DNA of 63,846 nucleotides, the filler included, from Octopus bimaculoides (lineage: Eukaryota): NCBI RefSeq assembly GCF_001194135.2. It is 4 parts of 4 records of this genome, joined end to end, with 100 filler letters (N's around TTAATTAATTAA, not from the genome) between each part and the next. Parts side by side here need not be neighbours in the genome. Positions count along the whole stretch, not along the records: positions 1 to 30,887 come from NC_068989.1; 3 more parts are not named here. One strand, given 5' to 3'. The translations under genes and the position numbers were made by a program. A model generated the notes under the pieces. It had not been told where the DNA came from. It was given only the letters and a program-made list of their open reading frames with translations, and ran no database searches. Position 1 is the stretch's first letter. The number at the start of each line of letters is the position of its first letter. Shown here in pieces: positions 1-28,021 of this stretch.

Positions 1-101
1 ATGTTATGAAAAATAGGTAAAGAATACTGAGATGAAAGTTTAATCTATGACTTTGTATGTATCACTTTCTCTCTCTTTCCCTCTCCCTCTTTTACTCTTA
101 T

Positions 102-369
102 TCTCTATATTTTTATGTTGAGCGCGTGCGTAAGAATGGCGTCCCAGGTAGCAGGGATGAAATATAAAAGTTGCTAGAAACAACAGCCAAATCTCCCTTA
201 AATCACACAAAGTAAACGGAATTTTAAAAATCTAATTACTGCACTGAAAAGTTCAGATCAAGAAAATTCCATTGATGTAAAAATTTTTACGAAAAAGTGG
301 AAAATGTGGATTTCTATAAACATTCAAAAAGGCTTCACACAAACACACAATTTCAGATTTATATATTAA
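102..369 (+). repeat. Dispersed repeat, about 268 bp; inverted near-identical copy at 30615-30882
   Basis: Reverse complement of 30615-30882 aligns without visible gaps and with only scattered substitutions. The motif tagaaacaacagcc recurs near 19150. Confidence 0.9.
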
Positions 370-385
370 GATTTTATAAAGACTT

Positions 386-866
386 CATGGTTTGTCTTGC
401 GACCTAAATGCTGGTCATTTCGCTCGTCACACCGAGCTAAACCTAATCATTAAGCGGGTCCTGGCTCGGGTTAATATCTCCTCAGTTCTGGAGCCATTTC
501 TTGCAAATGGTCTTACCTTTTGTCCCTGATTAAGAAATAGGTGCTTCATCTGGGACCACACAGTCTGTGAATCCTTTGCTCCCTCCACATCCTGGATGCT
601 GTGATAAATGGGAAGGTCACTACTTCCGAAGATGAACCGAACAAAATCCTTAAGTATCGGGACTTGTCAGTGAACCATTTCTTCTGGTCGGTGGCGTTTG
701 AGGCGTTGGACCGCTAACAGCAAAGTTCTTGTCAACGTTGGCAGCTCGCCTTGCCAAGGTGTCGAGTGATGCCTGTGAGGGTGTTTGGTTGTTCCAACGC
801 CTTAACCTCACAATCGCCTGCAATAATGCCGCAAGCATTTTGGCTTGCATCAGTAGGTTCCATTGA
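386..866 (+). mobile_element. CRE-clade non-LTR retrotransposon 3' fragment (restriction-like endonuclease region), with frameshifts and stops
   Basis: Hand translation gives HGLSCDLNAGHFARHTELNLIIKRVLARVNISSVLEP..GLTFCP*..CFIWDHTVCESFAPS, then KYRDLS..FEAL, then WLFQRLNLTIACNNAASILACI. This matches the CRE/RLE C-terminal pattern from family knowledge. Confidence 0.75.
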
Positions 867-1040
867 ATATTGTCGTGTGCTACCAATTGCAGCACTTAGT
901 GTTGAAGTGATGTTTTCTTCTTTCTTTTTCTTCCTTTCTTTCTCTTTTTTTTTTCTTTTCTGTCTTCACTCATGCTTGTGTTTTCTTCGGTTTTGGATTT
1001 GTATTTTAATGTATTTTTGTGTGATATATGTATCATATGT

Positions 1041-1300
1041 GGAGGCGCGTGGCTTAGTGGTTAGGGTGTCAGCATCATGATCGTAAGATTGTGGTTTCGA
1101 TTCCTATACCGGGCGACGCGTTGTGTTCTTGAGCAAAACACTTCATTTCGCGTTGCTCCAGTCCACTCAGCTGGCAAAAATGAGTAACGCTGCGATGGAC
1201 TGGCGTCCCGTCCAGCTGGGGAACACATACGCCATTGAAACCGGGAAACCGGGCCCATGAGCCTGGTTAGGCTTTAAAAGGGCGCATTTATTATTTATTT
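1041..1300 (+). mobile_element. tRNA-derived SINE, family B
   Basis: A-box-like TGGCTTAGTGG and B-box-like GTTTCGATTCC head, AT-rich tail. Related copies at 8526, 13742, 35598 and 39195. Confidence 0.85.
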
Positions 1301-2085
1301 ATATTATATCATATACATACGTGTTATATATGATAATTAACTTATCTAAATTTTCAATAGCTTGGTTTCAGATGACAAGAAGGGTATTCGAGTGTAGAAA
1401 AATCAGTGACAGTCGTGAATAGGGCTATGTTACTTGCTTTATCGACACATGATTTGTGTCCGAGACATATTGCAAGTAAGGGGGCCTACAACTCCCTTCT
1501 AGCAGTTGGCAGTACCAGTAGATCAATGGTTTCTGAGTAATTTTCCTTCTTCGGTACTGGACAACCGCCTGGCTCGAGACAGTAACCAGCCAACCTTAGC
1601 CACAGTATATACTTATCGAAAGCGACTATCAACGCTGATCTCGTTAGGAGAAAAACAACTAGTTTTAAATTTCTTATAAACCAGCTAGAAAAGATGTTCC
1701 CTGGCGTTAAAAAGTAATAACATAGTTCTATTAAGGACTGCCACGTTATATTACTATTCAGTATTGTTACTACATAGGTCTCAATCAGAGATTTAAAGCT
1801 AATTATATATCTATATATATTATAAAGAAGAAAACATACTCCAAACACCTTTGAAGTCATTCAAAATTACAGTATGTCGTTTCTATATTGTGTCCTCCGT
1901 TTTCTACGGGTGATTGGTTGTGTGACGTATACTCGACAACTTTACCATATGTTTGTATGTATGTGTGTGGCGTGTACGTACGTAACATATGTGATAAAGA
2001 GTTAATAGTATGTCAAGGTTAGTTTAGTAAAAGAAAAAAATCACAAATAGCCACAGAACAATGGTTATTTATAAATTTTACGTAC

Positions 2086-2178
2086 CGAAGAAGATTCGAA
2101 ATACTTCCAGTAAATTATAAGATATACAAAAAAGCCTCCTGTTATCAGGATGTAAACTTTTTTTCTATTTTCAATCAT
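2086..2178 (-). CDS. First coding exon of a putative second METTL24-like paralog (membrane-anchor exon): MIENRKKVYILITGGFFVYLIIYWKYFESSS
   Basis: Open 31 codons from ATG, phase-0 GT donor (TCG|gtacgt), clearly homologous to exon 20876-20980. No downstream exons were found in the window. Confidence 0.6.
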
Positions 2179-3000
2179 TTCGAGTCCAAGTCACTACTAA
2201 TAAAATTCAAATGCTGGTTTACGATAAATTATCGAACAGCATGGTCTGCTTATCTTTTCCGATAAATTATAGCGGTGGGAATAATTTATTAAATTACTGC
2301 TAACAAGTTTGGGTTTTTTTATCTCCATTATTCCACTTCGCATTTTTTTCTTTTCTTGCTGCGATTTAAAATTATTTTACGGTTGCTTTTGTAGATATTT
2401 TGGTTTTCGGTTCTACTAAAGTGTGTTAATAGGTGATGACTACGTTGACATGTAAGATATTAAAATATAGACATGTATAAATTGATTCTAAGTTTTATTT
2501 ATTTCTTTTTCTCCGTCAAATATTTAAAATGATAAGTATATTAGAAAATTATAACTTCAAAAGATTTGTTTTATTTTCTTCGTATATTTGTCGCTATTTT
2601 CTTCATATATTTGTCCTTATTTTCTTCATTTTATTCATATATTTTTCTATAACTATTCCATTTCCATTTAAGTTGCTTATAAGAAAAAATATTGTAATAT
2701 TTGAAAGAGGCATAATTTGAGATATGGAAACAGTCCACTGAATGATCTCATTTCTATACAGGTATTATTTCATTTCATTTCCCCTGGGAAGAAGGTCAAT
2801 TCGACCCAGAGAACATAAGAATTTTCTAGTGAATGTAAAGGGACATAACTTTAGGTTACAAAATAACTACAATTCTACCTTATTGGAGTTGTCGTTCATG
2901 CTTGTGCACTAACTACTTGGAATAACCAGTTGCTCGAAACATCAACTGATCCTACAAGCTATTGTATTCATTTCTAATATGTGATGGCAGCCATTAAAAG

Positions 3001-3401
3001 AAGGTGGCTGAGTGATAAGAAGTTTCCTTCCCAAATACATAGTTTCGCATTCAGTCCCACTGTGTAGCATCTTGGCCAGGTGTCTTCTACCATAATCTCG
3101 GGTCGACCAAAGCCTTATGAGTGGATTTGATTGACGGAAACTGAAAGAAGCCCGTCGTATATATGCCTATGTATATATCTATGTGTGTGCGCACCTTTGT
3201 GTCTGTGTTGTTCACACACACACACACATAATGCCTGATAACTGGTGTTGGTATGCTTACGTCCCCGAAACTTAGCAATTCGGCAAAGAAATCGATAGAA
3301 TAAAATAAGTCCTGGGGCCGATTTGTTCGACCAAAACCCTTCAAAGCGGTACCACTGCATGGCTGCAGTCAAATGACTGATGGATGTAAAAGATAAAAAG
3401 A
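3001..3401 (+). mobile_element. SINE family A (most abundant family in the window)
   Basis: tRNA-like head, internal (TG)n, tail gtcaaatgactg..aaaga. More than ten related copies in the window. Confidence 0.85.
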
Positions 3402-3832
3402 TATTAATTTAGCTTTCTCTCTCTCTCTCTCTCTCACTTTCTTTCTCCTTAATGACCGCCAGCAAGATTTCCATAAAACCAGATTCTCTGGTGATCAACT
3501 CCTCTCTGTCACCTACCATGGGGCTCTTGCTTTTGGAAGATGCTGGTGATATTGTCGTCCGCATCTGGAATTTGAATCACCAATCAAAACTTCTATGGCC
3601 TCCTCCCGTCTTTCATCTCTTGAATCAGTGGCTTCCCATTAGATCACGTTATTTTTTATTTAAAGTAATATTCGTGACACGTTACAGGCCTCCGAGGCTG
3701 GTAAAAGGGAGAGGAAAAGGTTACACCAACCAATTTTCCATGAAAACGTGTTCTGATATGAGGAAATATCACTTAGCTTGGTAACAGATGACAAGGACAG
3801 AGTGTAGAAAAATCAGCCTTAACAAATTCTAT

Positions 3833-3924
3833 GTATTTTTCTGCAATGTATGGATAATTTATCTTGATCACGCTATTTATAGCATTATCACGCGTTTGAG
3901 AAATAAATTTATTTCTGTATCTTA
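3833..3924 (+). repeat. 92-bp direct repeat, copy 1
   Basis: 91/92 identical to 4125-4216. The 13-bp sequence cttaacaaattct flanks the unit at 3818-3830 and 4213-4225. Confidence 0.95.
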
Positions 3925-4046
3925 CAATACATCTCAACGATTCTAAAGACAAACTTTGTTTACTTTCATCGTAAAGTTGAATTTAACGTTAGCGTCTTAT
4001 GAAGCTAAATGTATAAGTTCTAAAATTGCAGAAGAATTCGTTGCTG

Positions 4047-4118
4047 GGCAGTTTAGTTTAATGGTAAAACACTTGACATGTAATCACAGAAATGTGAGTT
4101 CGAGTCTCATGGCTGGAT
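4047..4118 (+). tRNA. tRNA-Thr(TGT)-like cloverleaf, probably a pseudogene or tRNA-like structure
   Basis: D stem GTTT/AAAC, T stem GTGAG/CTCAT with TTCGAGT loop, 7-nt anticodon loop with TGT at 4079-4081, A and B boxes present. There are two mismatches in the acceptor stem, two in the anticodon stem, and A at position 33. Confidence 0.6.
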
Positions 4119-4124
4119 GGCAAC

Positions 4125-4216
4125 GTATTTTTCTGCAATGTATGGATAATTTATCCTGATCACGCTATTTATAGCATTATCACGCGTTTGAGAAATAAAT
4201 TTATTTCTGTATCTTA
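4125..4216 (+). repeat. 92-bp direct repeat, copy 2
   Basis: 91/92 identical to 3833-3924; period 292 bp. Confidence 0.95.
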
Positions 4217-4639
4217 ACAAATTCTCTCTGATCTATGGAAAAGTGGACNNNNNNNNNNNNNNNNNNNNNNNNNNNNNNNNNNNNNNNNNNNNNNNNNNNN
4301 NNNNNNNNNNNNNNNNNNNNNNNNNNNNNNNNNNNNNNNNNNNNNNNNNNNNNNNNNNNNNNNNNNNNNNNNNNNNNNNNNNNNNNNNNNNNNNNNNNNN
4401 NNNNNNNNNNNNNNNNNNNNNNNNNNNNNNNNNNNNNNNNNNNNNNNNNNNNNNNNNNNNNNNNNNNNNNNNNNNNNNNNNNNNNNNNNNNNNNNNNNNN
4501 NNNNNNNNNNNNNNNNNNNNNNNNNNNNNNNNNNNNTGATCTCTAATATATACGTGTATATATATATATATATATATATTATGAGAGACAACTTCCTGTT
4601 ACCAAAGAGTTACTTAGCTTGACATTATTATTTGCTATA

Positions 4640-5260
4640 TTAATTTGAGGTGGGGAAAATATAGCAGAAAATATTATTCAGAATATGACCAGGAAATATT
4701 TACGTGATGTTGTGGAAACAAACAGCCTGGTATCATTGCTACACAGGTAGATGATTTCTGCTTTTCGGGTTCAGAGCTCTTCCAGACCCAAGTTATAAGT
4801 AGGCTTCATAAATTATTTAAAGGCAAGTCTGAAGAAATAGTAGAGTTCCAGTATATCAGATTAGATATTGAAAAGAATGGTCAGAATATTAAACTTGGAC
4901 AAGATGAATATGTAAAGGAATTAAAATATATCACAATAAAAAATAACAGAAATGGTTGACATGGCAGAAGCATGTATATTTTATAGAAGATTTTTATTAG
5001 AATTGCTTCAGTTAGAGAATAATAATGAAAAACATAAAATTGCCTAGCAAGACAGACAATTCTTGCCTGTTTGATACAGTACACTAAATTTTAGACAAAA
5101 GGCTTCACACAGAGATGGCCATCCTGGGAAGAATGATAGGCAAAAAGGAAATTGCAGAGATTTCATGGAGTCCAACAAATGTACAAATTACTGACACCTT
5201 CACAAAGAAAGGGATAGCATCCTTTAAGATTCTTGAGTTTATAATAAAGCCTAAAGAATC
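4640..5260 (+). mobile_element. Degenerate Ty1/Copia LTR retrotransposon RT and RNase H fragment
   Basis: Hand translation gives IATQVDDFCFSGSELFQTQVISRLHKLF..FQYIRLDIEKNGQNIKLGQDEYVKEL and EMAILGRMIGKKEIAEISWSPTNVQITDTFTKKG. Confidence 0.7.
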
Positions 5261-6323
5261 TTCAGTATACAGGCATACCTTGGCTTAAGTCTTCTCGATT
5301 ATACATCAGTTTTTAAAAATAATGTATGGAAAAATAAAAATCAAGTCATGTCATTTTAGTTGATTTTACGTCTGTTCACCACAAATATTGGAATCGTAAA
5401 ATTACTAGAAAATCGTTAAAAACACATAAAATCATGTTACTGTACAATAAATAAGAATAAAAGGATATAAAATCATATCAAAATACGTACAGTAAATGTT
5501 AAGATACACACCATAAAGTAGTGTAGCTTAGTGAATGCATCGAAGAACAGCCAGAGTCAGATGTAAATATTGACAATTTACAGCCATCTACATCCACGAT
5601 GTAAACCACCAAACTGTATGTACGTATTGGTAAATTTTAAATAATTTAGTTTTTTTTTTTACTATTGCAAATAATAATAATTACTGAATTTGTTTTTTAA
5701 GCTTAAAAAAAGGCTTTTATGTTACCATGTCTTATTGCAAACCGCATTCATAAAGTGTCCATGATGTATGGTAAACACAGCCAAATTGTATTCGTAAATT
5801 TAGATTGCTTCTTTTTTACTGTACTGTATTAAAAAAATTTTTTTATTGCTTGTTTGTAAGCTTAAAATAGGTCTTTATTAACCATGTATTATTGAAAATG
5901 TGTTCATAATTAAAGTACAGAACTGGGAATGTTTATTATCAGTTTAGCCTAGAGACAGGTAAATTCGGCCTAGCCTAGCCGAAAGAGAAGTTGATTTGAC
6001 TTAAGTCATGTCTCCTGGAACCAATTAATGACATGGGGTGAGGTGTGCCTGTGATTGTTAAAGTTACATTCATTTCCCTTTTTCAGCTGAAAGCCTGGTA
6101 CTAGCATTTAATCTCAATTGCCTGTCACCCATAAAAAAAAAATGAAAAAACAGGAAGATATAGTGCCAAAAGTATAAGGAAGATAATTCATTCCAAATTA
6201 TGAGGGGACTGTAAACAGAAAGTGAAGGATGCACAAGGTGTAAAAAAGAGGTTTCTTGATTTGGTTGTCTCACTAGTAATACAATGTTAACCCTACTGCA
6301 TTTAAAAATGTTTATTTTAATAA

Positions 6324-6327
<4 letters not shown>

Positions 6328-6354
<27 letters not shown>

Positions 6355-6489
6355 TAGTTCCCACCATACAACACTTGACAAGTGTTGGTTTGTTTATGTC
6401 CCCATAACTTAGTGGTACAGCAATAGAGACGCTCCAAACGAGCACCTGTAACCTCATCCACAGTCTAATGACTGAAACAAGATTAAAGA
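6328..6489 (+). mobile_element. SINE family A, partial 3' fragment
   Basis: (TG)n followed by degenerate family A body and tail aatgactgaaacaag. Confidence 0.6.
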
Positions 6490-6756
6490 TTCAAGATCAA
6501 AAGTACAGAGTTTTTCAAATTAAGTCCCTTATAAATTTGTTCAGCATCATATACATCAAATTCTGCCTCAACATTTTCACCACCAGGTGAAAATGATTGT
6601 CCTACCTGTAACCTCTAACCAACAATACAGCTATTCACAATTTGTGATGTCAATTTTCCCAAAAAGAAAATTTATATTTATATATATATATATATATATC
6701 CTACTCTTGTATCCTACACATTTACAAAATGACTTTCTGAAATGAACTTCCATTAT

Positions 6757-6844
6757 GCAGCTGAGGAGTACATTTTCATTGCACATCTTATGTGGTGTTC
6801 TCACTACATAAATAAATGAAGTTTGTACGAAACGTACGTACTGC
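6757..6844 (+). ncRNA. Minimal type I hammerhead ribozyme motif (Penelope-associated type)
   Basis: Stem I GCAG/CUGC, core CUGAGGA (6761-6767), stem II GUACA/UGUAC, then GAAAC-GUAC-GUA. Predicted cleavage after 6840; stem III tetraloop is palindromic. Confidence 0.75.
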
Positions 6845-6995
6845 TATAACCTAATGCATTTTTGTTGCTTTTCTTCAAATTTTATTCACCAAATCTCTTG
6901 ATTTTGTTTTTGGTTTTTACCCTACCAAATTCTGGTGCCTCAAACATTTTAAGTACCACATTTAATTTTTTGATTAAATCTATATTATTATATAT

Positions 6996-7410
6996 AGCTA
7001 CAAGTGTGGTTGTGTGGTAAGAAGCTTGCTTTCCAACCACATGGTTGTGGTTGTGGGTTCAGTCCCACTGCGTGGCACCTTGGGCAACTGTCTTCTATTG
7101 TAGCCTGATGCTGACCACAGCCTTGTGAGTGGATTTGGTAGATGGAAACTGAAAGAAGTCTGTCGTGTATGTGTGTGTGTGTGTGTATATACATATATGC
7201 ATGTATGTATTATGTGTTTGCCCCCCCCCCTGCTCCATCGCCTGACAACTGATGTTCATGTGCTTATGCCCCAAAACTTAGCAGTTCAGCAAAAGGAACT
7301 GATAAAATAAGTACTGGGCTTACAAAGAATAAGTCCTGGGGTCAATTTGTTTGACTAAAGGTGGTGCTCCAGCATGGTCGCAGTCAAATGACAAACAAGT
7401 AAAAGAAGAA
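6996..7410 (+). mobile_element. SINE family A, antisense in the probable 3' UTR of the METTL24-like gene
   Basis: Near full-length family A sequence ending 35 bp from the stop codon at 7445. Confidence 0.9.
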
Positions 7411-7444
7411 TATATATATATATATATATTACTGACAATATATT

Positions 7445-7741
7445 TTAACTAACTTTAACCATGTGGACGTTGTAACATTTGGTCAACAGAATATTTTTAT
7501 GACTGACATAATTGCAGTCTTTGTTCTTCGTTATTGAGAATGTTCGGAAGTTAAGATCCATCAATTTCTTGATAATAATAAGAGCATTATGGAAAGCATT
7601 CCACTTGGACTCTGCAGTGTAATATAGCACATGAAACTCAACTAACAACTGCTTTACAAGATCCAGTTCACCGTCAGAGATTGCCTTTGTCAGGGAGCGC
7701 CATTCTGCCATCTCTATATCTATTTTCAAAATAAATATGTT
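7445..7741 (-). CDS. METTL24: METTL24-like methyltransferase, last coding exon (exon 6)
   Basis: Acceptor tttttcag|AAC, phase 0. Encodes NIFILKIDIEMAEW..VKQLLVEFH..DLNFRTFSITKNKDC..CYNVHMVKVS*, the Methyltransf_22-type C-terminus. Confidence 0.9.
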   Translation of the reverse strand, partial: NIFILKIDIEMAEWRSLTKAISDGELDLVKQLLVEFHVLYYTAESKWNAFHNALIIIKKLMDLNFRTFSITKNKDCNYVSHKNILLTKCYNVHMVKVS

Positions 7742-8049
7742 CTGAAAAATTAAAGACAAAAAAAAGAAAAGATACTGAAGAAACTGTGAAACAAACACAC
7801 TTTTAACAAAGCTTTTGAAATAAGAAATGGATGATGCACAAATAGTTGAATGGAGAGAGAGAGGGGGAGAGGGAGAAAGAGAGGAAGAGCAGGGATAGAA
7901 GGAATAAAGAGGAAAAAATGAAAGAGATAGGGAGGAGGAGGTAAACAGAAAGAAAGACGGAAAAAGAATGTTTTAGTGAAAGATTTGTTTCCTTTATTAG
8001 TCCTTTATATTTTGAACAATAGCCTTGCTAAATCCATTAGCCTTCTGTC

Positions 8050-8320
8050 TGTTCAAGACACTCTTGTTATCCTCATCATCAGGATGAAATCATGGTAATT
8101 CTTTCTGATTTTCAGTTATCAAGACTTATCAATGAATAATTGATAAATTCTGGCATTGATGATTTTATCAGTTATAGCAGTATCTCCATGATCTTTTGCA
8201 GCCTGCTGTTAAGTGTGTGAACATGTTATCATCAGCATTATTTCATTCTGATAATAAGACCAAAGAGATCTTGAAATCTTAATGGACTAATGGATTTGTC
8301 AATATGACTGTTCCTAAATA
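8050..8320 (-). mobile_element. Possible highly degenerate Tc1-like transposase fragment
   Basis: KDHGDTAITDKIINARIYQ resembles the Tc1 G-x-MNA-x-x-Y segment. Multiple stops and frameshifts. Confidence 0.3.
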
Positions 8321-8525
8321 AATATAAAGAACTACTAAGGAAACAGGAAAATTCTTGAAAAGGATGAACCTCAAACACACTTTTATATAGCATGTTTTGA
8401 AAGAAAAGCTGTTCCTTCCTTACTTTCATACATACATACGTACATATATGTAGGCAGGCGCGCACACAGACACACACACACAAATAGATAAACAGACAGC
8501 TATTATATACAAATCCTTCCCAAGT

Positions 8526-8735
8526 CATAGTGACTCATAGGGTCAGTTTTTCAGTTTCCATGGCGTATATATTCTGTCTTGGATGGGATGCTGGCTTGTC
8601 GCAGTATCACTCATTTTCGCCAGCTGAGTGCAACAAGTTTTACTCAAAAACACAATACATTGCTTGGTCAAGAATCAAAACCACAATCTTACAATGATGA
8701 GTCCAACATCCCTAACCACTAAGCCACATGCCTAT
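8526..8735 (-). mobile_element. SINE family B
   Basis: Reverse complement matches the head and body of 1041-1300. Confidence 0.7.
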
Positions 8736-8768
8736 ACAAATATATACATACACACATATATTTCTTAC

Positions 8769-8904
8769 CTCTGTGTGATTTAAATACTTGCGAATGTCTG
8801 AGAGTGTCATAAACGATCTGTCACTAACAACATCCGTTTTATCCATTATTCCAATAGGATGGAAATTCATCAAAGAAAGATTTGGAATTCTTGTTTTATT
8901 TACA
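8769..8904 (-). CDS. METTL24: METTL24-like methyltransferase, exon 5
   Basis: Acceptor ttttactcag|T, donor GAG|gtaaga, phase 2 to 0. Encodes VNKTRIPNLSLMNFHPIGIMDKTDVVSDRSFMTLSDIRKYLNHTE. Confidence 0.88.
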
Positions 8905-9104
8905 CTGAGTAAAAGAAGAAAAAAAGAAAAAAACAAGGAAAAAATAATTTTGCTAACACATGTAAACAAAAAAGAAGCATGCATTAAAAGGAATGAGCCA
9001 TAGCATGCAGGAGAGAAGACTGTACTGGTTCAAATGTATGATACAAAGGAAGCATGATACTTTTTTTTTTACTTCATAATTTAGTTAGTGAGGAAAAGAT
9101 AACT

Positions 9105-9289
9105 CTGGAGAAAAAATTTCAGGAGTGGAAGCAAGGTCTGGATTCAAAGGGCCTCAGAGTTGATTGAACACATGCGTCCCTGCCCGTGGCTTGTACGGCT
9201 CTCACCAGCAACCCCTTTATCCCTAGTTTCTGCAATGACCAGCAGATAAGGGTACGGGGGACCTTGTCGAAGGCTTTCTTCATGTCAGA
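9105..9289. mobile_element. Rearranged RTE fragment: 66-bp direct copy of 9629-9694 fused to an inverted copy of about 9361-9480
   Basis: Exact 66-bp match; inverted arm of about 118 bp with few substitutions; flanked by gaaaagataactctg at 9093-9107 and 9288-9302. Confidence 0.85.
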
Positions 9290-9313
9290 AAAGATAACTC
9301 TGCATGCGTGCAT

Positions 9314-9354
<41 letters not shown>

Positions 9355-10741
9355 GCTTTTGCTGACATGAAGAAAGCCTTCGACAAGGTCCCCTGTACCT
9401 TTATCTGCTGGTCATTGTAGAAACTAGGGATAAAGGAGTCGCTGGTGAGAGCCGTACAAGCCATGTGCAGGGACGCTAGCAATGAATTCAGAATACAAGA
9501 ATCAATCCTCAGCCGCCTCCTGTTCATCATAATCCTCCAAACAAATAACAGATGTATTTAAGTTGGGCTGCCCCTGGAAGCTTCTTTATGCTGATGACCT
9601 TGTTCTTATAGCTGAATCACTAACAGAACTGGAGAAAAAATTTCAGGAGTGGAAGCAAGGTCTGGATTCAAAGGGCCTCAGAGTTGATTGAACAAAATCT
9701 CTTAGTAGGAAAGATGTCAAATCACAAATTCCTCCAGGTAGAAGATATGTAGAAAAGGCATAGGTAGAAACTCTATGAGGTGTACCCAGTGTAAGCTGTG
9801 GACACATGAGAGGTTCAGCAATATCAGAGGAAGCTTAACAGGGGAAATATTCTTTGTGTGTGGCAGATGCAAGGTACAGTAAACAGTAGAAGTATACAGA
9901 AAATACAGACTTCATCAAATGCTAGTGGAGGATAACTAGAAATAGTTGATAACTTTTGTTATCTAGGTGACCAAGTCAGTAGTGGGGGGAGATGCTCTGA
10001 AAGCATAGCTACTAGAATAAGAATAGGCTAGGCAAAATTCAGAGGACTTCTACCTTTGTTGGCAACAAAGGGTTTCTCCTTCAAAGTGAAAGGCAGATTG
10101 TATGATGCCTGTGTGCAAACAGCCATGCTACACTACACTGAAACATGGACTGTGGCAGCAGAGGACGTGTGAAGGCTTGAAAGAAATTAATCTAATATGC
10201 TCCACTGGATGTGCAATGTTGGTGTACATGTACGACTAAGTGTATGCATCTTGAGAGGAAAATTAGGCATAAGAGGCATCAGATGTCGTGAGCAAGAGAG
10301 ACAACTGTGGTGGTATGATTGTGTGATGCACATAGATGAGGACAACTGCATAAAGAATTGCTGATCTCTAACTGTGGAGGGAACTTGTGGAAGAGGTAGA
10401 TCCAGGAAGACATGGGATGAGGTGGTGAAGCATGATCTTTGAATGTGGGGTCTCATGGAGGAGATGATTGTGACCTTTCGCAACTTAATGTGGTTGAGAA
10501 GACTTGTCAAATCAAATGAAATCATAGTTGTGGCCAGTGTTGGAAACATAAAAACACCCATGCTAGAGACATGTAAAAGACACCCACTACACTCTCAGAG
10601 TGGTTGGCATTAGGAAGGGTATCCAGTCACATAGAAATCATGCCAAGTTCAGACTGGAACCTGGTGCAGCTCTCTGGTTTATCAGTTCCACTCAAGCCAT
10701 CTAACCCATACCAGTGAATGTCAAATGATGATGATGATGAT
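9355..10741 (+). mobile_element. RTE-clade LINE 3' part (degenerate RT, 3' UTR, (GAT)n tail)
   Basis: DMKKAFDKV, WKLLYADDLVLIAES, FCYLGDQVS and LYDACVQTAMLH motifs; tail atgatgatgat. Confidence 0.9.
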
Positions 10742-11335
10742 GTGCACATGCATTTATGTTGGGGCCTCCAGTTTTTGAGAGAAAAGGAAAAAGTTACTTT
10801 CAAATAAAGAACTGGCATAAATGCATTGGAGTAGAGACTGCTAAAGATACCTAAGGACCTGGTAGTGGTGTTAACGCCTATGTTACCATATTTCTGTTGA
10901 AGTACACTGACTTTGATGCAATTAATTTCTATAATAATGGTGAATTTAGCAGAATAACTTTGCTATTTTTGAGCTGGGATTTGAAACATAAATTAACAAG
11001 AAATTTCTCGAAGAATTTAATGGAGATTGCTTTACAAAACAGGAAATTTGTATCTAAGGCCCAGGAATAGTTTCAGGTAGGTTGGGATGAAAGTAGTTAA
11101 GCAGAGTGATGAATTACATCTACTCTCCAAGAATGCAGAACACAAAGAACCAAAACAAAAAGCCAAATCATCTCCCATGAGACAACTGAGTGCATCTGTT
11201 TGGATGCTGACAATTTGGCATGGGTGACTGGACACTCAGCCAGCTTTGTTGACAGTACTTTTTGGCACTAGATACACACATACACATGAAGACAGAAAGA
11301 ATGAGTGAGAGAGCGGTATTACAATTTATTAATTT

Positions 11336-11717
11336 ACACTTTTACTTGTTTCAGTCATTTCACTGTGGCCATGCTGGAGCACCACCTTTAGTCAAGCAAA
11401 TCGACCCCAGAACTTATTCATTGTAAGCTTGGTACTTATTCTATTGGTCTCTTTTGCCGAACCGCTTAGTTACAGGGACATAAACACACCAGCATCTGTT
11501 GTCAAGCGATGTTGGGGGGACAAACACATACACAAACATATACATATATACATATACACATATACGACGGGCTTCTTTCAGTTTCCGTCTCCCAAATCCA
11601 CTCACAAGGCTTTGGTCGGCCCGAGGCTATAGTAGAAGACACTTGCCCAAGGTGCCATGCAGTGGGACTGAACCCGGAACCATGTGGTTGGTAAGCAAGC
11701 TACTTACCACACAGCCA
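11336..11717 (-). mobile_element. SINE family A
   Basis: Reverse complement of a near full-length family A copy. Confidence 0.9.
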
Positions 11718-12658
11718 AACACAATTGACATAAATATTGTTCCCCTCTTCATACACATAAAAAGAAATATGGCCACACACATAAACCAATAGAAAGAAGA
11801 GGGAGAAAGTGGAAGAAACAGTAAAACGTCCGATATCAAATAAGATAGCATTGAATCAGTGTTACCAAATGGGCAGTGCCAAAACTGCTGTGATAAAATG
11901 TCTCATCTCTAACTTCGCTATACCAATACGAGAAGTAGTGAGGACCAATCTCGCGACACAGGTTTTCATAAAAGAAACATATGAAGGACCACGACTAGTG
12001 GTAAAACACTGTATTAAAACTTGTCCATCAAACCCGTATTAGCATAGAAAATACAAAATTTTCAGTGCTACTTTGTCATGATCTACAAGGGAGATTACTT
12101 TAGGCTACTTTTAAAATTATTTTGTACATACTTAGCATTGTAAATGTACTTTTCAAAATTCTTGATAAGAAAACCATTTGTTGTCGGCACTCCGTCGCTT
12201 ACTTACCACACAGCCACTCCTGCGCCTATAGAGAAAGTTTTCTGCAACACTGGTTGCTCTGTCCTATTTATCTCATATTCAAATAGTTCCATGAAACTAA
12301 ATCTAAGTAAGTCACTTCATGAGCTCCAGCTCTATCACACTGACATGAGAGCTAACTTTTCTAGTTATGAAATATGTACACCAATAGCTAAAGCAAATGA
12401 CACAAATCATTGTATTGTACTTTGGGGTTAGGGGCATAACTCTATTTACTACTGTGTCTGGGTAATAAACAGGTTGCACTTTTATGTTGCTTCTGTTCTT
12501 GTTGAGCTCCAAGTCAGCCATGGTTGAATAGAACTATCATCAAAAGCATTCCAACCATGACTATTTCTTCGACTCATTTTAAATATCTAGTAAGTCTTTT
12601 TTTTTTAATAGTTGGGTGTGACTATCGGGAGAAAATATATGTTTATATCAGTGTGGGG

Positions 12659-12925
12659 TTGTTGTTGGCACTCTGTCGCTTACGACGTCGAGGGTTCCAG
12701 TTGATCCGATTAACGGAACAGCCTGCTCATGAAATTAACGTGCAAGTGGCTGAGCACTCCACAGACACGTGTACCCTTAACGTAGTTCTCGGGGATATTC
12801 AGCGTGACACAGTGTGACAAGGCTGGCCCTTTGAATTACAGGTACAACAGAAACAGGAAGTAAGAGTGAGAGAAAGTTGTGGTGGAAGAGTACAGCAGGG
12901 TTCGCCACCATCCAGTGCCGGAGCC
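12659..12925. mobile_element. Dispersed SINE-like repeat, family E
   Basis: Near-identical to 58571-58880; (GTT)n at one end. Fragments at about 12180 and 54795. Confidence 0.85.
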
Positions 12926-13075
12926 ATGTAACATAAATTACATGTAACTGAACTACATTAACATGTAACATAAACATCAACTAAATTACACGTAACATAA
13001 CCTATTTGCTTCATAGATATAAGTTAAATATAGCTGCTATCACCATTGCCGCAACAACCGAAAGAAGGTACTTAC

Positions 13076-13150
13076 AAAGGATCAAAGGAATGCACTTCAC
13101 AGCTAAAGATTTTCTGCATCTCAACATCAAAACTTGACTCAAGACCAATT
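13076..13150 (-). CDS. METTL24: METTL24-like methyltransferase, exon 4
   Basis: Acceptor ctttctttcaacag|A, donor TT|gtaagt, 75 bp, phase 2 to 2. Encodes (G)IGLESSFDVEMQKIFSCEVHSFDP(F). Confidence 0.92.
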
Positions 13151-13399
13151 CTGTTGAAAGAAAGACAATATGTATATGATGTGTGTGTGTGTGTGTGTGT
13201 GCGCGCGCACGTGCATCAGTGACTCTTTGTCTTAACTTTGTATGATAGCTGTAAACAAATGTCACTGTCATACAAGTGGTGACTTTTATTTTCATTCTTC
13301 TGTGTAAAAATGCCAGGGCATGGGGAAATAATACCTTGCTTGAAAACAGCTAAGGGCATCTGGCTGTAAAAAAATCTGCCTCAACAAATAATGACTGGC

Positions 13400-13560
13400 C
13401 CATGCATGCATAATACAAATCGGTATTTCTGGGATGAAGAATTTTTATATTATGTATTAGCCAGAGTAGTTTCCTCATCTTAGTTGTTGCTTTTCACTAT
13501 GTTTCAGCTGTGTGTGCTCCACCTTCTTCAGGTAGATGGTAATTGACCTTAGTAACCTTG
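13400..13560 (-). mobile_element. Penelope-like element terminal fragment with a decayed CUGAAGA..GAAAC motif
   Basis: The minus strand reads CTGAAGAagg..ctGAAACatagtg; there is no valid cleavage triplet. Confidence 0.35.
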
Positions 13561-13741
13561 TCTAGGATTGAACTTTAAACTTCTAAGCAACTTCACTGCA
13601 TTAGCTAGTAGCACCTTTCTCCACTATGCTAAATCCATTTTTAAGGTTTATAAAGCTTCATTGATGTCCTATGTTGTCCCCTTACTGATTGGATGACACA
13701 ATTCTACATTTGTGAGATTAGGAATTTTTATATTATGTATA

Positions 13742-13945
13742 GTGAAGGTGCATAGCTCAGTGGTTAGTGCATTGGGCTCACAATCATGAGGTAGTGAGTT
13801 CAATTTCTTGACCAGGTTGTGTGTTGCATTCTTAAGCAAGACACTTTATTTTACGTTGCTCCAGTTCACTCAGCTGTAGGAATGAGTTGCTATGTCACTG
13901 GTGCCAAGCTGTATCAGCCTTTGCCTTTTCCTTGGATAACACCAG
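13742..13945 (+). mobile_element. SINE family B
   Basis: tRNA-like head tagctcagtggttag..gagttcaattt and body cttaagcaagacacttt..gttgctccagttcactcagctg. Confidence 0.8.
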
Positions 13946-13947
13946 AG

Positions 13948-14110
13948 GTGTGGAGGCAAGGTGGCTAAGTTCCTTTCGAGCGTTGGGCCACATGGAAGCA
14001 AAGTGGCCAAGCTACTGGGCTTCATGGAGGCAAAGTGGCAGAGTTCCTTTTGAGAGTTGGGCCTCATGAAGGCAAAGTGGCAGAGCTCCTCTCAAGTGTT
14101 GGGCCTTGAA
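13948..14110 (+). repeat. Diverged tandem repeat, about 4 units of roughly 30-45 bp (catggaggcaaagtggc..ttgggcc)
   Basis: Repeating core seen directly. Confidence 0.75.
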
Positions 14111-14375
14111 AAGATGAAAGGCAAAAAAATCAAAAACTGAGTTCAGTGGAATCTGAACGCAGAGTGTAAAGATGAATGAAATGTCACTAAGCAAGTGTGT
14201 TATGTGTTAATGATTCTGCCAATTTACTGCCTTACTATGAAATATTGAAAATCAATATATTTAATTACATTAAATTACCTTTTCTTATAACAGCTGTCAA
14301 ACACTACGTTATATATGGTGCATTTTAAGGGTCTCTAAACAATTGAGATCCAAATATCAAAATGTATATCATACG

Positions 14376-14973
14376 TGAAAAGACCTGACAAGCCAAGTGA
14401 GACCATAACCCATGGCCTATGCCAGGGGTGTAACCAGCCCACTTATGGGTACCTTTCCATCACTGGGCACTAAACTCTGCTTGCGAAGACCTGTTGAGGC
14501 AAGTGAAATCGAATCAAATTCGCAAATTCGATGACTGGCACCCGTGCCAGTGGAGCGCTGCGAGCACCATCCAAGCGTGAGTGTTGCCAGAGCAGCTGAC
14601 TGGCTTCCGTGCTGGTGGCATGTAAAAAGCATCATTCAAGCATGATCGTTACTAGCGTTGTGTTGGTGGCACATGAAAAAACATTTGAGCGAGGTCATTG
14701 CCAGTGCCACTGGACTGGCTTCTGTGCAGGTAGCATGTAAAAAACACCATTTGAGTGTGGCCGTTGCCAGTACCGCTTGACTGGCCCACATGCCAGTGGC
14801 ACGTAAAAGCACCCACTACACTCTCGGAGTGGTTGGCATTAGGAAGAGCATCCAGCTGTAGAAACTCCGCCAGATCAGATTAGAGCCTGGTGCAGCCATC
14901 TGGTTCACCAGTCCTCAGTCAAATCGTCCAACCCATGCTAGCATGGAAAGCAGATGTTAAATGATGATGATGA
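14376..14973 (+). mobile_element. RTE 3'-UTR-derived element with internal subrepeats and (GAT)n tail
   Basis: Shares its 3' end (aaaagcacccactacactc..ggttggcattaggaag..atgatgatg) with 10570-10741 and 17061-17400. Confidence 0.85.
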
Positions 14974-15571
14974 CGTGGTAGCATATTTATACACTTCTTA
15001 TGTTAACTCTCTCTGTATCTAACTTTTACTCCATTTCCCCCTCTCTCTTTGAGATGTAAAGTGATAAGAGAAAACAGACCAACAATTGTGTATGTGTGTG
15101 TGAATAAATATACAATTCTGTTATAAGAATTCATGCGTGTGTGCATATTTGTGTGTGTATACACATATTATTTTGTTATAAGAATTCAAAACTAATGTAG
15201 ATTGTCTGGGTCAACATTTAAAATCTTACCTGTTTATAATTTTACATGATGATGGCACATTACATGTTATGATATATCTTCTATGACTGCATTAAATAAA
15301 TAAAATTGTACTGAAAATTTGAACATTTCATAAATTTGAAATGCCATTTGTTTACTTTTTATATAGAGAAATTTAACTATATAATGACTATAAAGAATGA
15401 TCTTCTATAATTGTATATGAATTTAAACTCAGCAACATAAAGCTGGTGTGCAGTGCAGAAAAAAATGTTGTGATCTACTATTAAAAGCTATTATCCTCCA
15501 TTCCAGTGATATATACATATATATATAAGGTGATTAAAGTCAAAATAAGCAACAAGGATATCCAAAGTTAA

Positions 15572-15657
15572 TGCAGTACGATCGTTTCATGCGACTATTT
15601 AATTAAGCAATGTAAACATTGCATCAAATATAAAATGTAGAGCAATCTTCAGCTGCA
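15572..15657 (-). ncRNA. Minimal type I hammerhead motif in the left foldback arm (sense to the METTL24-like pre-mRNA)
   Basis: UGCAG-CUGAAGA-UUGC...GCAU-GAAAC-GAUC-GUA-CUGCA: 5-bp stem I and a palindromic GAUC loop. Confidence 0.6.
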
Positions 15658-15768
15658 CAAAAATATAGAAATTTAATGAAATTACATTTCAACAGAAGGA
15701 CATTATATTATATTATAAAAATATGTCCTTCTGTCTAAATGTAATTTCATTAAAATTCTATATCTTTG

Positions 15769-15856
15769 TGCAGCTGAGGATTGCTCTGCATTTTATATTT
15801 GATGTAATGTTTACATTGCTTAAATAAATGGAGTCACATGAAACAATTGTACTGCA
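15769..15856 (+). ncRNA. Minimal type I hammerhead motif in the right foldback arm
   Basis: UGCAG-CUGAGGA-UUGC...ACAU-GAAAC-AAUU-GUA-CUGCA: palindromic AAUU loop, weak stem II. Confidence 0.55.
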
Positions 15857-18362: not shown

Positions 18363-18600
18363 CTCACACAGAACTTGTGATAATTTTTTTACACGTTTAG
18401 GATTGGCTCGAAGGCTGCTTAGTAAGAAAACTACTTTAGTTGGAACAATTAGAAAGAACAGAGTTGAACCTCCAAGTGCTTTCACAAATGGAAAAGAAAG
18501 AGAAATCAACAGCACGATATTTGGATTTCAAAAGGATTCTATGATCCTATCTTATTGTTCCAAGAAAAATTATGTTGTCACAGTTATGAGTACAATGCAC
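18363..18600 (+). mobile_element. piggyBac-family transposase fragment
   Basis: TCDNFFT..LARRLLSKKTTLVGTIRKNR..STIFGFQKD..LSYCSKKNYVVTVMSTMH contains the DNxF catalytic-D and GTxRKN motifs. Confidence 0.88.
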
Positions 18601-18813
18601 TCTCTTTACTCTTTTACTTGTTTCAGTCATTTGACTGCGGCCATGCTGGAGCACCGCCTTTAGTCGAGCAGATCGACCCCAGGACTTATTCTTTGGAAGC
18701 CTAGTACTTATTCTATCGGTCTCTTTTGCCGAACCGCTAAGTTACGGGGACGTAAACACACCAGCATCGGTTGTCAAGCGATGTTGAGGGGACAAACACA
18801 GACACACAAACAT

Positions 18814-18858
<45 letters not shown>

Positions 18859-18903
18859 CGACGGGCTTCTTTCAGTTTCCGTCTACCAAATCCACTCACA
18901 AGG
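18601..18903 (-). mobile_element. SINE family A, 5'-truncated
   Basis: Reverse complement of the family A body and tail. Confidence 0.9.
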
Positions 18904-21844: not shown

Positions 21845-21905
<61 letters not shown>

Positions 21906-21984
21906 AATGACCACCAGCAAGATTTCCATAAAGCCAGATCCTCTGGTGATCAACTGTTCTCTGTCACCTATTATTGGGCTCCTC

Positions 21985-23165: not shown

Positions 23166-23191
23166 CCAATCACAAAAATGGCCGCCATTTG
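23166..23191 (-). promoter_or_regulatory. YY1-like motif (CAAATGGCGGCC on the minus strand) next to a CCAAT, possible promoter
   Basis: Motif match only, about 2.2 kb upstream of the METTL24-like ATG; no transcript evidence. Confidence 0.25.

Positions 23192-26082: not shown

Positions 26083-26143
<61 letters not shown>

Positions 26144-27985: not shown

Positions 27986-28021
<36 letters not shown>

What the first reader, a model, noticed from the sequence alone, without database searches (positions are those of the whole stretch)
3818..4225. tRNA-Thr-like cloverleaf on a long stem inside a terminally redundant 292-bp unit with a 13-bp TSD
Seen: cttaacaaattct is duplicated on both sides. The insert is 92-bp repeat, 200-bp unique, 92-bp repeat (91/92 identical). 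The unique part ends in a 72-nt cloverleaf (anticodon TGT, A and B boxes, T5 run about 10 nt downstream). Its flanks ttgcagaagaattcgttgc and gcaacgtatttttctgcaa pair at 18 of 19 positions (one G-U), so the cloverleaf caps a helix of about 21 bp. The AT-rich D stem (GTTT/AAAC) is not typical of animal nuclear tRNA-Thr. Inference: a TSD plus 1.3 unit lengths is what reverse transcription of a circular or multimeric RNA followed by LINE-type insertion would leave. It could be an undescribed retrozyme-like or TRIM-like element using a tRNA-like structure instead of a ribozyme, or a captured piece of a foreign or organellar tandem/minicircle tRNA unit.
Basis: partly seen in the sequence, partly recalled or inferred. 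Interest (0 to 1): 0.75.

Follow-up and report, generated by a model that had tools for sequence, protein, structure and literature searches.

The report
Small tRNA-bearing retroelement, partial-tandem insertion
A young, roughly 385-bp mobile-element insertion in an octopus genome consists of 1.3 head-to-tail copies of a 292-bp non-coding unit carrying a decayed tRNA-like module; this layout is already known from Penelope-like retroelements and their riders, so it is a real but fairly ordinary find unless more copies show otherwise.

Summary
Two 92-bp repeats (91/92 identical) lie 292 bp apart. They are flanked by an exact 13-bp duplication, and a tRNA-like sequence (Rfam 31.2 bits, cut-off 29) sits on a 21-bp helix followed by a T5 run. 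The window is Octopus DNA, collinear with O. vulgaris at about 87% identity. The best reading is a recent insertion by target-primed reverse transcription: a 5'-truncated copy followed by one full unit of a small non-autonomous retroelement. Such partial tandems ("pseudo-LTRs") with 8-10-bp duplications and palindromes are the published signature of Penelope-like elements, which are active in Octopus. Schistosome Sm-alpha elements already combine a tRNA-derived module with tandem units. LTR/TRIM membership fails: no TG..CA ends, PBS or PPT, and the duplication is too long. Retrozyme membership fails: no hammerhead. A canonical SINE fails: the tRNA part is internal and a terminator follows it. 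Foreign or organellar origin found no support. I found no second copy in 51 kb of octopus DNA. I could not reach the orthologous site or any whole octopus genome, so family status, the empty site and stem covariation remain untested. The ribozyme-free circular-RNA idea is not excluded but has no direct support.

The parts
3818..3830 (.). Left copy of the target-site duplication, CTTAACAAATTCT
   Evidence: Exact 13-bp direct repeat with 4213-4225. It lies inside an older host repeat that aligns with 13320-13389 up to ...CAACAAAT.
3831..3924 (+). R1: the 5'-truncated partial unit (last 92-94 nt of the unit), i.e. the pseudo-LTR
   Evidence: 3833-3924 is 91/92 identical to 4125-4216. A3831 also matches A4123, then there is a T/C mismatch.
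3899..3916 (.). 18-nt perfect palindrome AGAAATAAATTTATTTCT in R1. It contains AATAAA at 3902-3907.
3925..4024 (+). Start of the full unit: unique AT-rich leader made of local hairpins
   Evidence: No similarity elsewhere in the window or in L001. Local hairpins in the fold.
4025..4046 (+). 5' arm of the long helix. It is an inverted copy of the 5 nt before R plus the first 15 nt of R.
   Evidence: Inverted repeat I2, 18/20. 13+8 bp in the MFE fold, z = -4.9.
4047..4117 (+). Degenerate tRNA-derived module: A-box-like TAGTTTAATGG, B-box-like AGTTCGAGTCT, anticodon loop CAUGUAA
   Evidence: Rfam RF00005 at 4049-4115, 31.2 bits against GA 29. ARAGORN finds it only at a relaxed threshold and as Tyr.
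4118..4139 (+). 3' arm of the long helix; overlaps the start of R2
4127..4131 (+). T5 run, a Pol III terminator-like signal 10 nt after the tRNA-like module. The same run is in R1 at 3836-3840.
4125..4216 (+). R2: the 3' end of the full unit, with the palindrome at 4191-4208 and AATAAA at 4194-4199
4213..4225 (.). Right copy of the target-site duplication. Its first 4 nt (CTTA) are shared with the end of R2 (3'-junction microhomology).
4249..4536 (.). Assembly gap (288 N) next to a (TA)n tract. Not part of the element, but it limits the right flank to 23 bp.

Best explanation
This is a recent retro-insertion made by target-primed reverse transcription. A staggered break at CTTAACAAATTCT was primed on the 3' end (...CUUA) of a small non-coding RNA. 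The cDNA ran through one complete ~292-nt unit (3925-4216) and then a further 92-94 nt into a second, head-to-tail copy of the same unit before stopping (3831-3924). The result is a 5'-truncated copy in front of a full copy, which is a pseudo-LTR.

This layout is the hallmark of Penelope-like elements (PLEs) and their non-autonomous riders. It arises from multimeric transcripts or from the enzyme re-copying its template. A LINE reverse transcriptase that jumps templates would give the same product.

The unit carries a decayed tRNA-derived Pol III module set in the centre of a 40-bp palindrome and followed by its own T5 terminator. The module is most likely a relic of how the unit arose, either as a SINE-like promoter or as a captured tRNA pseudogene. 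It is not a working tRNA.

Shown: the repeats, the duplication, the helix, the tRNA similarity, and the absence of LTR-type and ribozyme signals. Inferred: the RNA intermediate, the enzyme, and the existence of a family.
For: - Exact 13-bp duplication flanks a repeat-unique-repeat block whose repeats are 91/92 identical.
- 4-nt overlap between the element's 3' end and the start of the downstream duplication, as expected when the nicked target primes on the RNA 3' end.
- The left duplication copy belongs to an older host repeat, so it is target DNA and not element DNA.
- Published PLE insertions are partial tandems in which a full copy is preceded by a truncated copy that forms a pLTR. They carry 8-10-bp duplications and 18-38-bp palindromes in the pLTR, and can carry unrelated sequence between pLTRs (PMC8557442, PMC3846280).
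- Non-autonomous pLTR-forming and head-to-tail multicopy elements without hammerheads exist, for example MRC1 and the Chlamys/Naiad elements.
- PLEs, LINEs and hundreds of unclassified SINE families are recently active in O. vulgaris (PMC13282606).
- LINE RT fragments lie in the same window.
- Youth: 1 difference in 92 nt between the repeats, against about 13% divergence between the window and O. vulgaris. Identical duplication copies. CpG observed/expected is 1.38 in the insert against 0.62 in the window.
Against: - Only one copy was seen. There is none in the other 30 kb of the window or in 20.5 kb of O. vulgaris.
- No whole octopus genome could be searched, so the existence of a family is unproven.
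- No hammerhead, which canonical PLE pLTRs carry.
- No 30-40-bp PLE 'tail' was recognised.
- At 92 bp the repeat is short for a pLTR.
- No similarity to any autonomous element could be tested.
- The right flank is only 23 bp before an assembly gap, and the paralogous empty-site alignment across it is not significant (290 of 2000 shuffles do as well).
Confidence: 0.55

Rival explanations
1. Ribozyme-free retrozyme analogue. Multimeric transcripts are cut at the tRNA-like module by RNase P and RNase Z. The 21-bp helix holds the ends of the remaining ~220-nt piece together, it is ligated into a circle, and a PLE or LINE reverse transcriptase rolls around the circle to give 1.3 units.
For: - The unit size (292 bp), low GC (0.27-0.40), head-to-tail arrangement and a duplication longer than 4 bp match metazoan non-LTR retrozymes (PMC7229834).
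- The helix that brackets the tRNA-like module is far more stable than chance (z = -4.9).
- The circular unit folds better than shuffles (z = -3.3).
- The 3' end coincides with a 4-nt target microhomology, as expected if priming can start anywhere on a circle.
Against: - No hammerhead or other Rfam ribozyme.
- The paired fraction of the circular fold (63%) is the same as in shuffles (61%), and the fold is branched, not rod-like.
- The tRNA-like part is degenerate: 5-bp acceptor stem, A33, bulged anticodon stem. Recognition by RNase P/Z is therefore uncertain.
- No expression or circular-RNA data, no second copy, no covariation.
- A multimeric linear template explains the same structure.
Confidence: 0.08
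2. DNA-level event or a collapsed array. The block is a piece of a 292-bp tandem array (or of a circular DNA derived from one) pasted into a staggered break, or it is a longer local tandem array that the short-read assembler reduced to 1.3 units.
For: - Head-to-tail structure with near-identical repeats.
- An assembly gap 23 bp away and other gaps in the window show a fragmented short-read assembly.
- PLE-type tandems are known to break short-read assemblies.
Against: - Both junctions to unique DNA are assembled, and they carry a precise duplication with a 3' microhomology, which a collapsed array alone does not create.
- The gap is next to a (TA)n tract, which explains it without invoking the element.
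- Tandem Repeats Finder reports no 292-bp array anywhere in the window.
Confidence: 0.15
3. Retro-copy of the terminally redundant genomic RNA (R-U5...U3-R) of a miniature LTR element, inserted by LINE machinery like a processed pseudogene. The 92-bp repeat would be the retroviral-type R region.
For: - Terminal redundancy is what such an RNA has.
- AATAAA lies 17 nt before the end of the repeat, where an R region's poly(A) site would be.
- The duplication is of LINE type.
Against: - No poly(A) tail at the 3' junction.
- No PBS-like TGG after the first repeat and no purine tract of 8 nt or more anywhere.
- AATAAA is part of an AT-rich palindrome and is expected by chance at a few percent in sequence this AT-rich.
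Confidence: 0.07
4. A true miniature LTR retrotransposon (TRIM, Helenus-like) integrated by an integrase, with 92-bp LTRs and a 200-bp internal part.
For: - Direct terminal repeats around a short non-coding core, with a tRNA-like sequence, superficially like Helenus/TRIMp3 (PMC10886601).
- An alternative parse gives TG...CA-like ends with a 6-bp duplication, AATTCT.
Against: - That parse needs a 7-bp coincidence between the target and the LTR end.
- The duplication is 13 bp, not 4-6.
- No PBS next to the 5' repeat, and no TGG at all on the minus strand. No PPT.
- The tRNA-like sequence is in the internal part and occurs once, not in the LTRs as in Helenus.
Confidence: 0.03
5. Captured foreign or organellar tRNA unit, or a pure assembly chimera.
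For: - The AT-rich D arm is unusual for an animal nuclear tRNA.
- CpG is not depleted.
Against: - ARAGORN's mitochondrial modes find nothing. The conserved D-loop GG and the T-loop TTCGA are, from general knowledge of tRNAs, of the cytosolic type.
- Exact-pattern scans of viral contigs, JGI metagenomes and 185,579 bacterial/archaeal species found no copy of the repeat or of the tRNA-like 3' half.
- A D-arm-plus-T-arm pattern hit only an unrelated tRNA-Asp and an unrelated tRNA-Met.
- The two repeats differ at one base, so they are separate copies and not one read path used twice.
Confidence: 0.04

Closest known systems
Penelope-like elements and their non-autonomous pLTR-forming derivatives (e.g. 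MRC1 of Chlamydomonas; pLTR-flanked captured sequences in Adineta vaga)
   Same: A 5'-truncated copy directly in front of a full copy gives direct pseudo-LTRs. Duplications are of variable length, about 8-10 bp or more. The pLTR contains palindromes. The content is non-coding and the target AT-rich. Hammerhead-less lineages exist (PMC8557442, PMC3846280, PMC11167929).
   Different: The repeat is only 92 bp. No hammerhead, no recognised tail, and no demonstrated similarity to an autonomous PLE. The unit contains a tRNA-like module.
Sm-alpha / Sj-alpha SINE-like retroposons of schistosomes
   Same: Non-coding units carrying a tRNA-derived (Gln-TTG) Pol III module. They often sit as tandems of two or more units and propagate from multimeric transcripts (PMC6765202, PMC2770079).
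   Different: Those carry an active hammerhead that cuts the multimer. Here there is none, and a T5 run directly follows the tRNA-like part, so Pol III would stop before the rest of the unit.
Metazoan non-LTR retrozymes
   Same: Monomers of about 170-450 bp (here 292), low GC, dimers to multimers, duplications longer than 4 bp when present, and no PBS or PPT (PMC7229834; bioRxiv 10.64898/2026.07.22.740005).
   Different: The defining type I hammerhead is absent. The fold is no more paired than chance. No circular RNA evidence.
[quoted passage not shown]
   Same: Short terminal direct repeats, a tiny non-coding core, and a tRNA-derived sequence that is not a working tRNA (PMC10886601).
   Different: Helenus has the tRNA-like part inside both LTRs, a PBS and a PPT, and 4-5-bp duplications. 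None of these holds here.
Classical tRNA-derived SINEs (including the octopus OK, OR1 and OR2 families cited in PMC10886601, ref. 12)
   Same: tRNA-derived A and B boxes, a short non-coding body, and a duplication typical of nick-primed insertion.
   Different: The tRNA part is not at the 5' end and is followed by a terminator. There is no A-rich or simple-repeat tail. The copy is a 1.3-mer. Sequence comparison with the octopus SINE consensus sequences was not possible.

Membership tests
Penelope-like (PLE-type) partial-tandem insertion, non-autonomous | Full copy preceded head to tail by a 5'-truncated copy, giving direct pseudo-LTRs | tested here: met
   R1 (3831/3833-3924) abuts the start of the full unit (3925-4216), which ends in R2. 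The repeats are 91/92 identical. Definition from PMC8557442.
Penelope-like (PLE-type) partial-tandem insertion, non-autonomous | Short target-site duplication of variable length (8-10 bp reported in A. vaga) | tested here: met
   9-13 bp, exact. Literature values.
Penelope-like (PLE-type) partial-tandem insertion, non-autonomous | Hammerhead ribozyme in the pLTR (canonical clades only; Naiad and Chlamys lack it) | tested here: not met
   No Hammerhead family hit at E <= 10. No CUGANGA core on either strand.
Penelope-like (PLE-type) partial-tandem insertion, non-autonomous | Palindrome in the pLTR | tested here: met
   An 18-nt perfect palindrome lies in each repeat. The repeat start is half of a 40-bp interrupted palindrome. 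Compare the 18- and 38-bp pLTR palindromes in PMC3846280.
Penelope-like (PLE-type) partial-tandem insertion, non-autonomous | 3' end shared with an autonomous PLE of the same genome; many copies with the same 3' end | not testable with these tools
   No eukaryotic genome collection can be searched by DNA. There is no copy in the 51 kb of octopus DNA held.
Metazoan non-LTR retrozyme | Type I hammerhead in every tandem unit | tested here: not met
Metazoan non-LTR retrozyme | Tandem units of about 170-450 bp with low GC | tested here: met
   292-bp unit, GC 0.27-0.40. Criteria from PMC7229834.
Metazoan non-LTR retrozyme | Expressed as a highly self-paired circular RNA | tested here: inconclusive
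   The circular fold has z = -3.3, but its paired fraction (63%) is about the same as in shuffles (61%) and it is branched. Expression is not testable here.
TRIM / Helenus (TRIMp3) | 4-6-bp target-site duplication and TG...CA LTR ends | tested here: not met
   13-bp duplication. The repeat starts (A)TGTAT / ACGTAT and ends ...ATCTTA.
TRIM / Helenus (TRIMp3) | PBS next to the 5' LTR and a polypurine tract before the 3' LTR | tested here: not met
   No TGG between the end of R1 and the start of the tRNA-like part (4045), and none on the minus strand. No purine run of 8 nt or more on either strand.
TRIM / Helenus (TRIMp3) | tRNA-like sequence inside the LTRs | tested here: not met
   There is a single tRNA hit, at 4049-4115, between the repeats.
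tRNA-derived SINE | tRNA-related head at the 5' end, able to drive Pol III through the body | tested here: not met
   The head starts 215 nt into the insert and about 120 nt into the unit. T5 follows 10 nt after it.
tRNA-derived SINE | LINE-derived, A-rich or simple-repeat 3' tail | tested here: inconclusive
   The element ends ...TTTCTGTATCTTA with no A run or microsatellite. It shows no similarity to the LINE fragments in the window. The partner LINE is unknown.
tRNA-derived SINE | Dispersed multicopy family | not testable with these tools
   None in 51 kb. The ORF-as-protein search of the element found nothing.
Functional nuclear tRNA-Thr gene | Canonical cloverleaf: 7-bp acceptor stem, U33, intact anticodon stem, score typical of tRNA genes | tested here: not met
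   31.2 bits, barely above GA 29. Model positions 3-68 only. Bulged anticodon stem and A33. ARAGORN gives no call at default and Tyr at a relaxed threshold. The cloverleaf is not the MFE fold.
Organellar (NUMT) or foreign tRNA unit | Match to an organelle-type tRNA, or to viral, bacterial or archaeal sequence | tested here: not met
   ARAGORN -mt and -mtmam find none. Exact-pattern scans were negative or hit only unrelated tRNA-Asp and tRNA-Met. The octopus mitochondrial genome itself was not available.

The most novel reading that the evidence does not exclude
The 292-nt unit is a ribozyme-free counterpart of animal retrozymes. The tRNA-like module seated on the 21-bp helix acts as a cellular processing signal (RNase P / RNase Z) that cuts multimeric transcripts into monomers. 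The helix aligns the monomer ends for ligation into a ~220-nt circle. That circle is the template for rolling reverse transcription by a Penelope-like or LINE enzyme, which gives insertions of more than one unit length.
Probability: 0.07. Interest if true: 0.8.

Novelty: new member of a known kind. Interest (0 to 1): 0.33.

Why it matters
If the unit proves to be a family, it would add a small hammerhead-less, tRNA-module-bearing rider to the Penelope-like or LINE retroelements of octopus genomes. In O. vulgaris, 893 of the 900 recently active SINE families remain unclassified (PMC13282606). It would also be a useful young insertion marker between Octopus species. Only if the tRNA-like module turned out to replace the ribozyme in making circular RNA would it bear on a wider question, namely how retrozyme-like elements can arise without catalytic RNA. 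As it stands, the value of the check is mostly negative: the striking terminally redundant layout is explained by a known insertion signature.

Tried and rejected
1. Other copies.
- blastn (word size 7) of the insert against the rest of the window and against 20.5 kb of O. vulgaris found nothing beyond chance.
- Searching the element's 67-aa ORF as a pseudo-protein against 5.8 billion proteins found nothing.

2. Empty site.
- ORF 30067-30618 led to O. vulgaris OX597822.1. The locus is collinear with the window only from 21,436 onward, about 17.6 kb short of the site.
- A 4,079-aa concatenate of all non-repeat ORFs from 1-14,200, used as a handle search, found no annotated protein.
- Exact look-ups of ORFs next to the site, and of the 183-aa ORF, found nothing on record.
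- A paralogous empty site (13320-13389) supports the left duplication copy as host DNA. It is not significant across the 23-bp right flank.

3. Foreign origin.
- Three viral, two metagenome and one bacterial/archaeal exact-pattern scans found no copy. The only hits were generic AT-rich tRNAs.

4. Full-text search for four sequence words of the element found no paper.

5. Rejected readings.
- Working tRNA-Thr: weak score, broken acceptor top, A33.
- TRIM/Helenus: no PBS or PPT, no TG..CA ends, wrong duplication length.
- Strict retrozyme: no hammerhead.
- MITE carrying a tRNA: no matching duplication next to the 20-bp inverted arms.
- Viroid-like rod: the fold is branched and no more paired than shuffles.
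- tRNA-complement PBS of a minus-strand LTR element: the position where TGG should pair with CCA reads CCA on that strand, and the repeat ends are not TG..CA.

6. Pfam on the pol-like fragment at 4708-5285 and on the flanking ORFs gave no hit.
Full report
**What is there.** The coordinates and all sequence statements of the finding are correct.
- Two 92-bp direct repeats, R1 (3833-3924) and R2 (4125-4216), are 91/92 identical and lie 292 bp apart. One more matching base extends them to 3831/4123, followed by a T/C mismatch.
- The block is flanked by an exact 13-bp direct repeat, CTTAACAAATTCT (3818-3830 and 4213-4225). The right copy shares CTTA with the end of R2, so the true duplication is 9-13 bp.
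- Between the repeats lie 200 bp of unique sequence. It ends in a tRNA-like stretch that Rfam scores at 31.2 bits (gathering score 29; 4049-4115).
- The tRNA-like stretch is bracketed by a 20-nt inverted repeat, 4025-4044 / 4120-4139. In the minimum-energy fold this becomes a 13+8-bp helix carrying the tRNA-like domain. The z-score is -4.9, and none of 200 dinucleotide shuffles folds as well.
- A T5 run follows 10 nt after the tRNA-like part.

**How good is the tRNA?** Poor.
- ARAGORN finds nothing at default or in the mitochondrial modes. At a relaxed threshold it proposes Tyr-GTA, while the Rfam alignment implies UGU.
- The top two acceptor pairs are mismatches, the anticodon stem has a bulge, and position 33 is A.
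- The cloverleaf-on-stem fold is 6 kcal/mol worse than the MFE.
- It is therefore tRNA-derived, with recognisable A- and B-box-like motifs, and is not a working tRNA gene. No other tRNA-like hit occurs in the window or in 20.5 kb of O. vulgaris DNA.

**Whose genome?**
- ORF 30067-30618 is 71% identical to a hypothetical protein of Octopus vulgaris.
- The O. vulgaris locus (L001, OX597822.1:26154148-26174672) is collinear with window 21,436-30,605 at 81-98% nucleotide identity, about 87% weighted.
- The window is thus from an Octopus species close to, but not the same as, O. vulgaris. It is full of repeats: a ~400-bp high-copy element at five places, LINE RT fragments and a piggyBac-like fragment.

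**Is it an insertion?**
- The precise duplication at both junctions is very unlikely by chance. Eight other non-simple direct repeats of 13 bp or more occur in 30 kb, but none sits at the junctions of a larger repeat.
- The left 13-mer lies inside an older host repeat that aligns with 13320-13389 up to ...CAACAAAT. It is therefore target DNA.
- Extending that alignment across the junction into the 23-bp right flank is not significant (290 of 2000 shuffles do as well). The paralogous empty-site test is therefore inconclusive.
- The insert looks young. The repeats differ by 1 in 92, the duplication copies are identical, and CpG observed/expected is 1.38 against 0.62 for the window.
- Against about 13% divergence from O. 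vulgaris, this predicts an empty orthologous site there.

**What kind of insertion?** A 9-13-bp duplication, together with a 4-nt overlap between the element's 3' end and the start of the downstream duplication, is what nick-primed (target-primed) reverse transcription leaves.

The LTR-integrase alternative fails on every defining feature that could be tested:
- no TG...CA ends;
- no TGG-type primer-binding site after R1, and no TGG at all on the minus strand;
- no purine tract of 8 nt or more;
- a duplication that is too long.

A 6-bp-duplication parse exists, but it needs a 7-bp coincidence. Helenus/TRIMp3 elements, the known TRIMs with tRNA-like sequences, carry that sequence inside both LTRs and make 4-5-bp duplications (PMC10886601). 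Neither holds here.

**The 1.3-unit layout is a known signature.**
- In Adineta vaga such structures carry 8-10-bp duplications and 18- to 38-bp palindromes in the pLTR. They can even carry unrelated sequence between pLTRs (PMC3846280).
- Non-autonomous pLTR-forming and multicopy head-to-tail elements without hammerheads are described, for example MRC1.
- The PLE enzyme initiates internally on multimeric transcripts (PMC11167929).
- PLEs (31 families), LINEs and 900 SINE families, 893 of them unclassified, are recently active in O. vulgaris (PMC13282606).
- The block here fits this pattern. R1 is the 5'-truncated copy, 3925-4216 is the full unit, each repeat holds an 18-nt perfect palindrome, and the repeat start is half of a 40-bp interrupted palindrome.
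- A template-jumping LINE enzyme would give the same product, and I cannot separate the two.

**Retrozyme comparison.** Animal non-LTR retrozymes are tandem units of about 170-450 bp with low GC, duplications longer than 4 bp and no PBS or PPT (PMC7229834; bioRxiv 10.64898/2026.07.22.740005). All of that matches.
- Their defining type I hammerhead is absent. Rfam finds no ribozyme at E <= 10, and there is no CUGANGA core on either strand.
- The circularised 292-nt unit folds better than shuffles (z = -3.3). However, it is branched, and its paired fraction (63%) is about the same as in shuffles (61%).
- The nearest published combination of a tRNA-derived module with tandem units is Sm-alpha/Sj-alpha of schistosomes, which again carries a hammerhead (PMC6765202, PMC2770079).

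**Role of the tRNA-like module.** This part is inferred, not shown.
- Because T5 follows it directly, Pol III starting at the module would make only an RNA of about 85 nt and would not transcribe the rest of the unit. The module therefore cannot serve as a classical SINE head for this unit.
- It is most simply a relic: a SINE-type or tRNA-pseudogene sequence caught in the centre of a palindrome of the element, perhaps through template switching.
- The more novel possibility is that RNase P and RNase Z cut multimers at this module, and the helix aligns the ends for circularisation. This is compatible with the geometry but has no direct support. I give it about 7%.

**Foreign or organellar origin.**
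- Exact-pattern scans for the repeat core and for the tRNA-like 3' half found nothing in IMG/VR viral contigs or JGI metagenomes.
- A D-arm-plus-T-arm pattern, run against the viral contigs and one genome from each of 185,579 bacterial and archaeal species, hit only an unrelated archaeal tRNA-Asp and a viral tRNA-Met.
- The AT-rich D arm is therefore generic, not diagnostic.

**Limits.**
- No whole octopus genome could be searched by DNA.
- The three protein searches yielded only the one O. vulgaris handle, too far from the site. Exact ORF look-ups failed.
- Family membership, copy number, the true empty site and covariation of the helix are therefore untested.
- A 288-N gap begins 23 bp after the right duplication. 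It adjoins a (TA)n tract, which probably explains it, but the number of units could be under-assembled.

**Verdict.** The most likely reading (0.55) is a young target-primed insertion of a partial tandem of a small non-autonomous retroelement carrying a decayed tRNA-derived module. That makes it a new member of a known kind. Interest is modest unless genome-wide copies reveal circular permutation or a conserved processing role for the tRNA-like domain.

Noticed in passing
window 3004-3404, 7006-7427, 11324-11717, 18600-18906, 28347-28789; also L001 around 4374-5147, 7991-8349 and 15264-15706: A repeat of about 300-430 bp occurs five times in 30 kb and at least three times in 20 kb of O. vulgaris, at 72-92% identity. 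It is presumably one of the very abundant octopus SINE-like families. Rfam sees no tRNA head in it.
   Followed up: partly
window 4708-4956 and 5088-5285 (+): Just beyond the assembly gap, two ORF fragments look like the end of a retroelement pol (VDDFCFSGS...; ...QITDTFTKKG...). Pfam gave no hit, so this rests on my reading alone. The relation to the insertion is unknown.
   Followed up: partly
window 9100-10340 and 17431-18360; 18280-18663: Two related LINE reverse-transcriptase fragments (RVT_1; YADD motif) and an overlapping piggyBac-type transposase fragment (DDE_Tnp_1_7, E = 4.6e-11).
   Followed up: partly
window 30067-30618 (+): An acidic 183-aa ORF with no Pfam domain is conserved (71% aa) as an annotated hypothetical protein in O. 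vulgaris. The 9 kb upstream is collinear between the two species at 81-98% identity.
   Followed up: partly
window 15621-15804 (+): Full-length match to the plant MIR841 precursor model at 74.7 bits (gathering score 200, E = 6e-14). It is surely not that miRNA and is probably a long hairpin or inverted-repeat element next to a 10-N gap and an (AG)n tract.
   Followed up: no
window 3758-3827, 13320-13389, 1358-1406: An old, weakly conserved (72-78%) repeat contains the insertion's target site.
   Followed up: yes
window 3413-3526 versus 21844-21981: The ORF just upstream of the insertion starts with the same (CT)n-plus-SKISIKPD.LVIN.SLSP segment as a LINE-like ORF at 21.9 kb. The homology stops at 3526.
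   Followed up: no
window 3831-4216: CpG observed/expected is 1.38 in the insert against 0.62 for the whole window. The sample is small but points to a young or unmethylated sequence.
   Followed up: partly
window 19790-20011; 13951-14106; 14666-14808: Short tandem arrays with long periods (120 bp x 1.8, 42 bp x 4, 66 bp x 2.2), of unknown nature.
   Followed up: no
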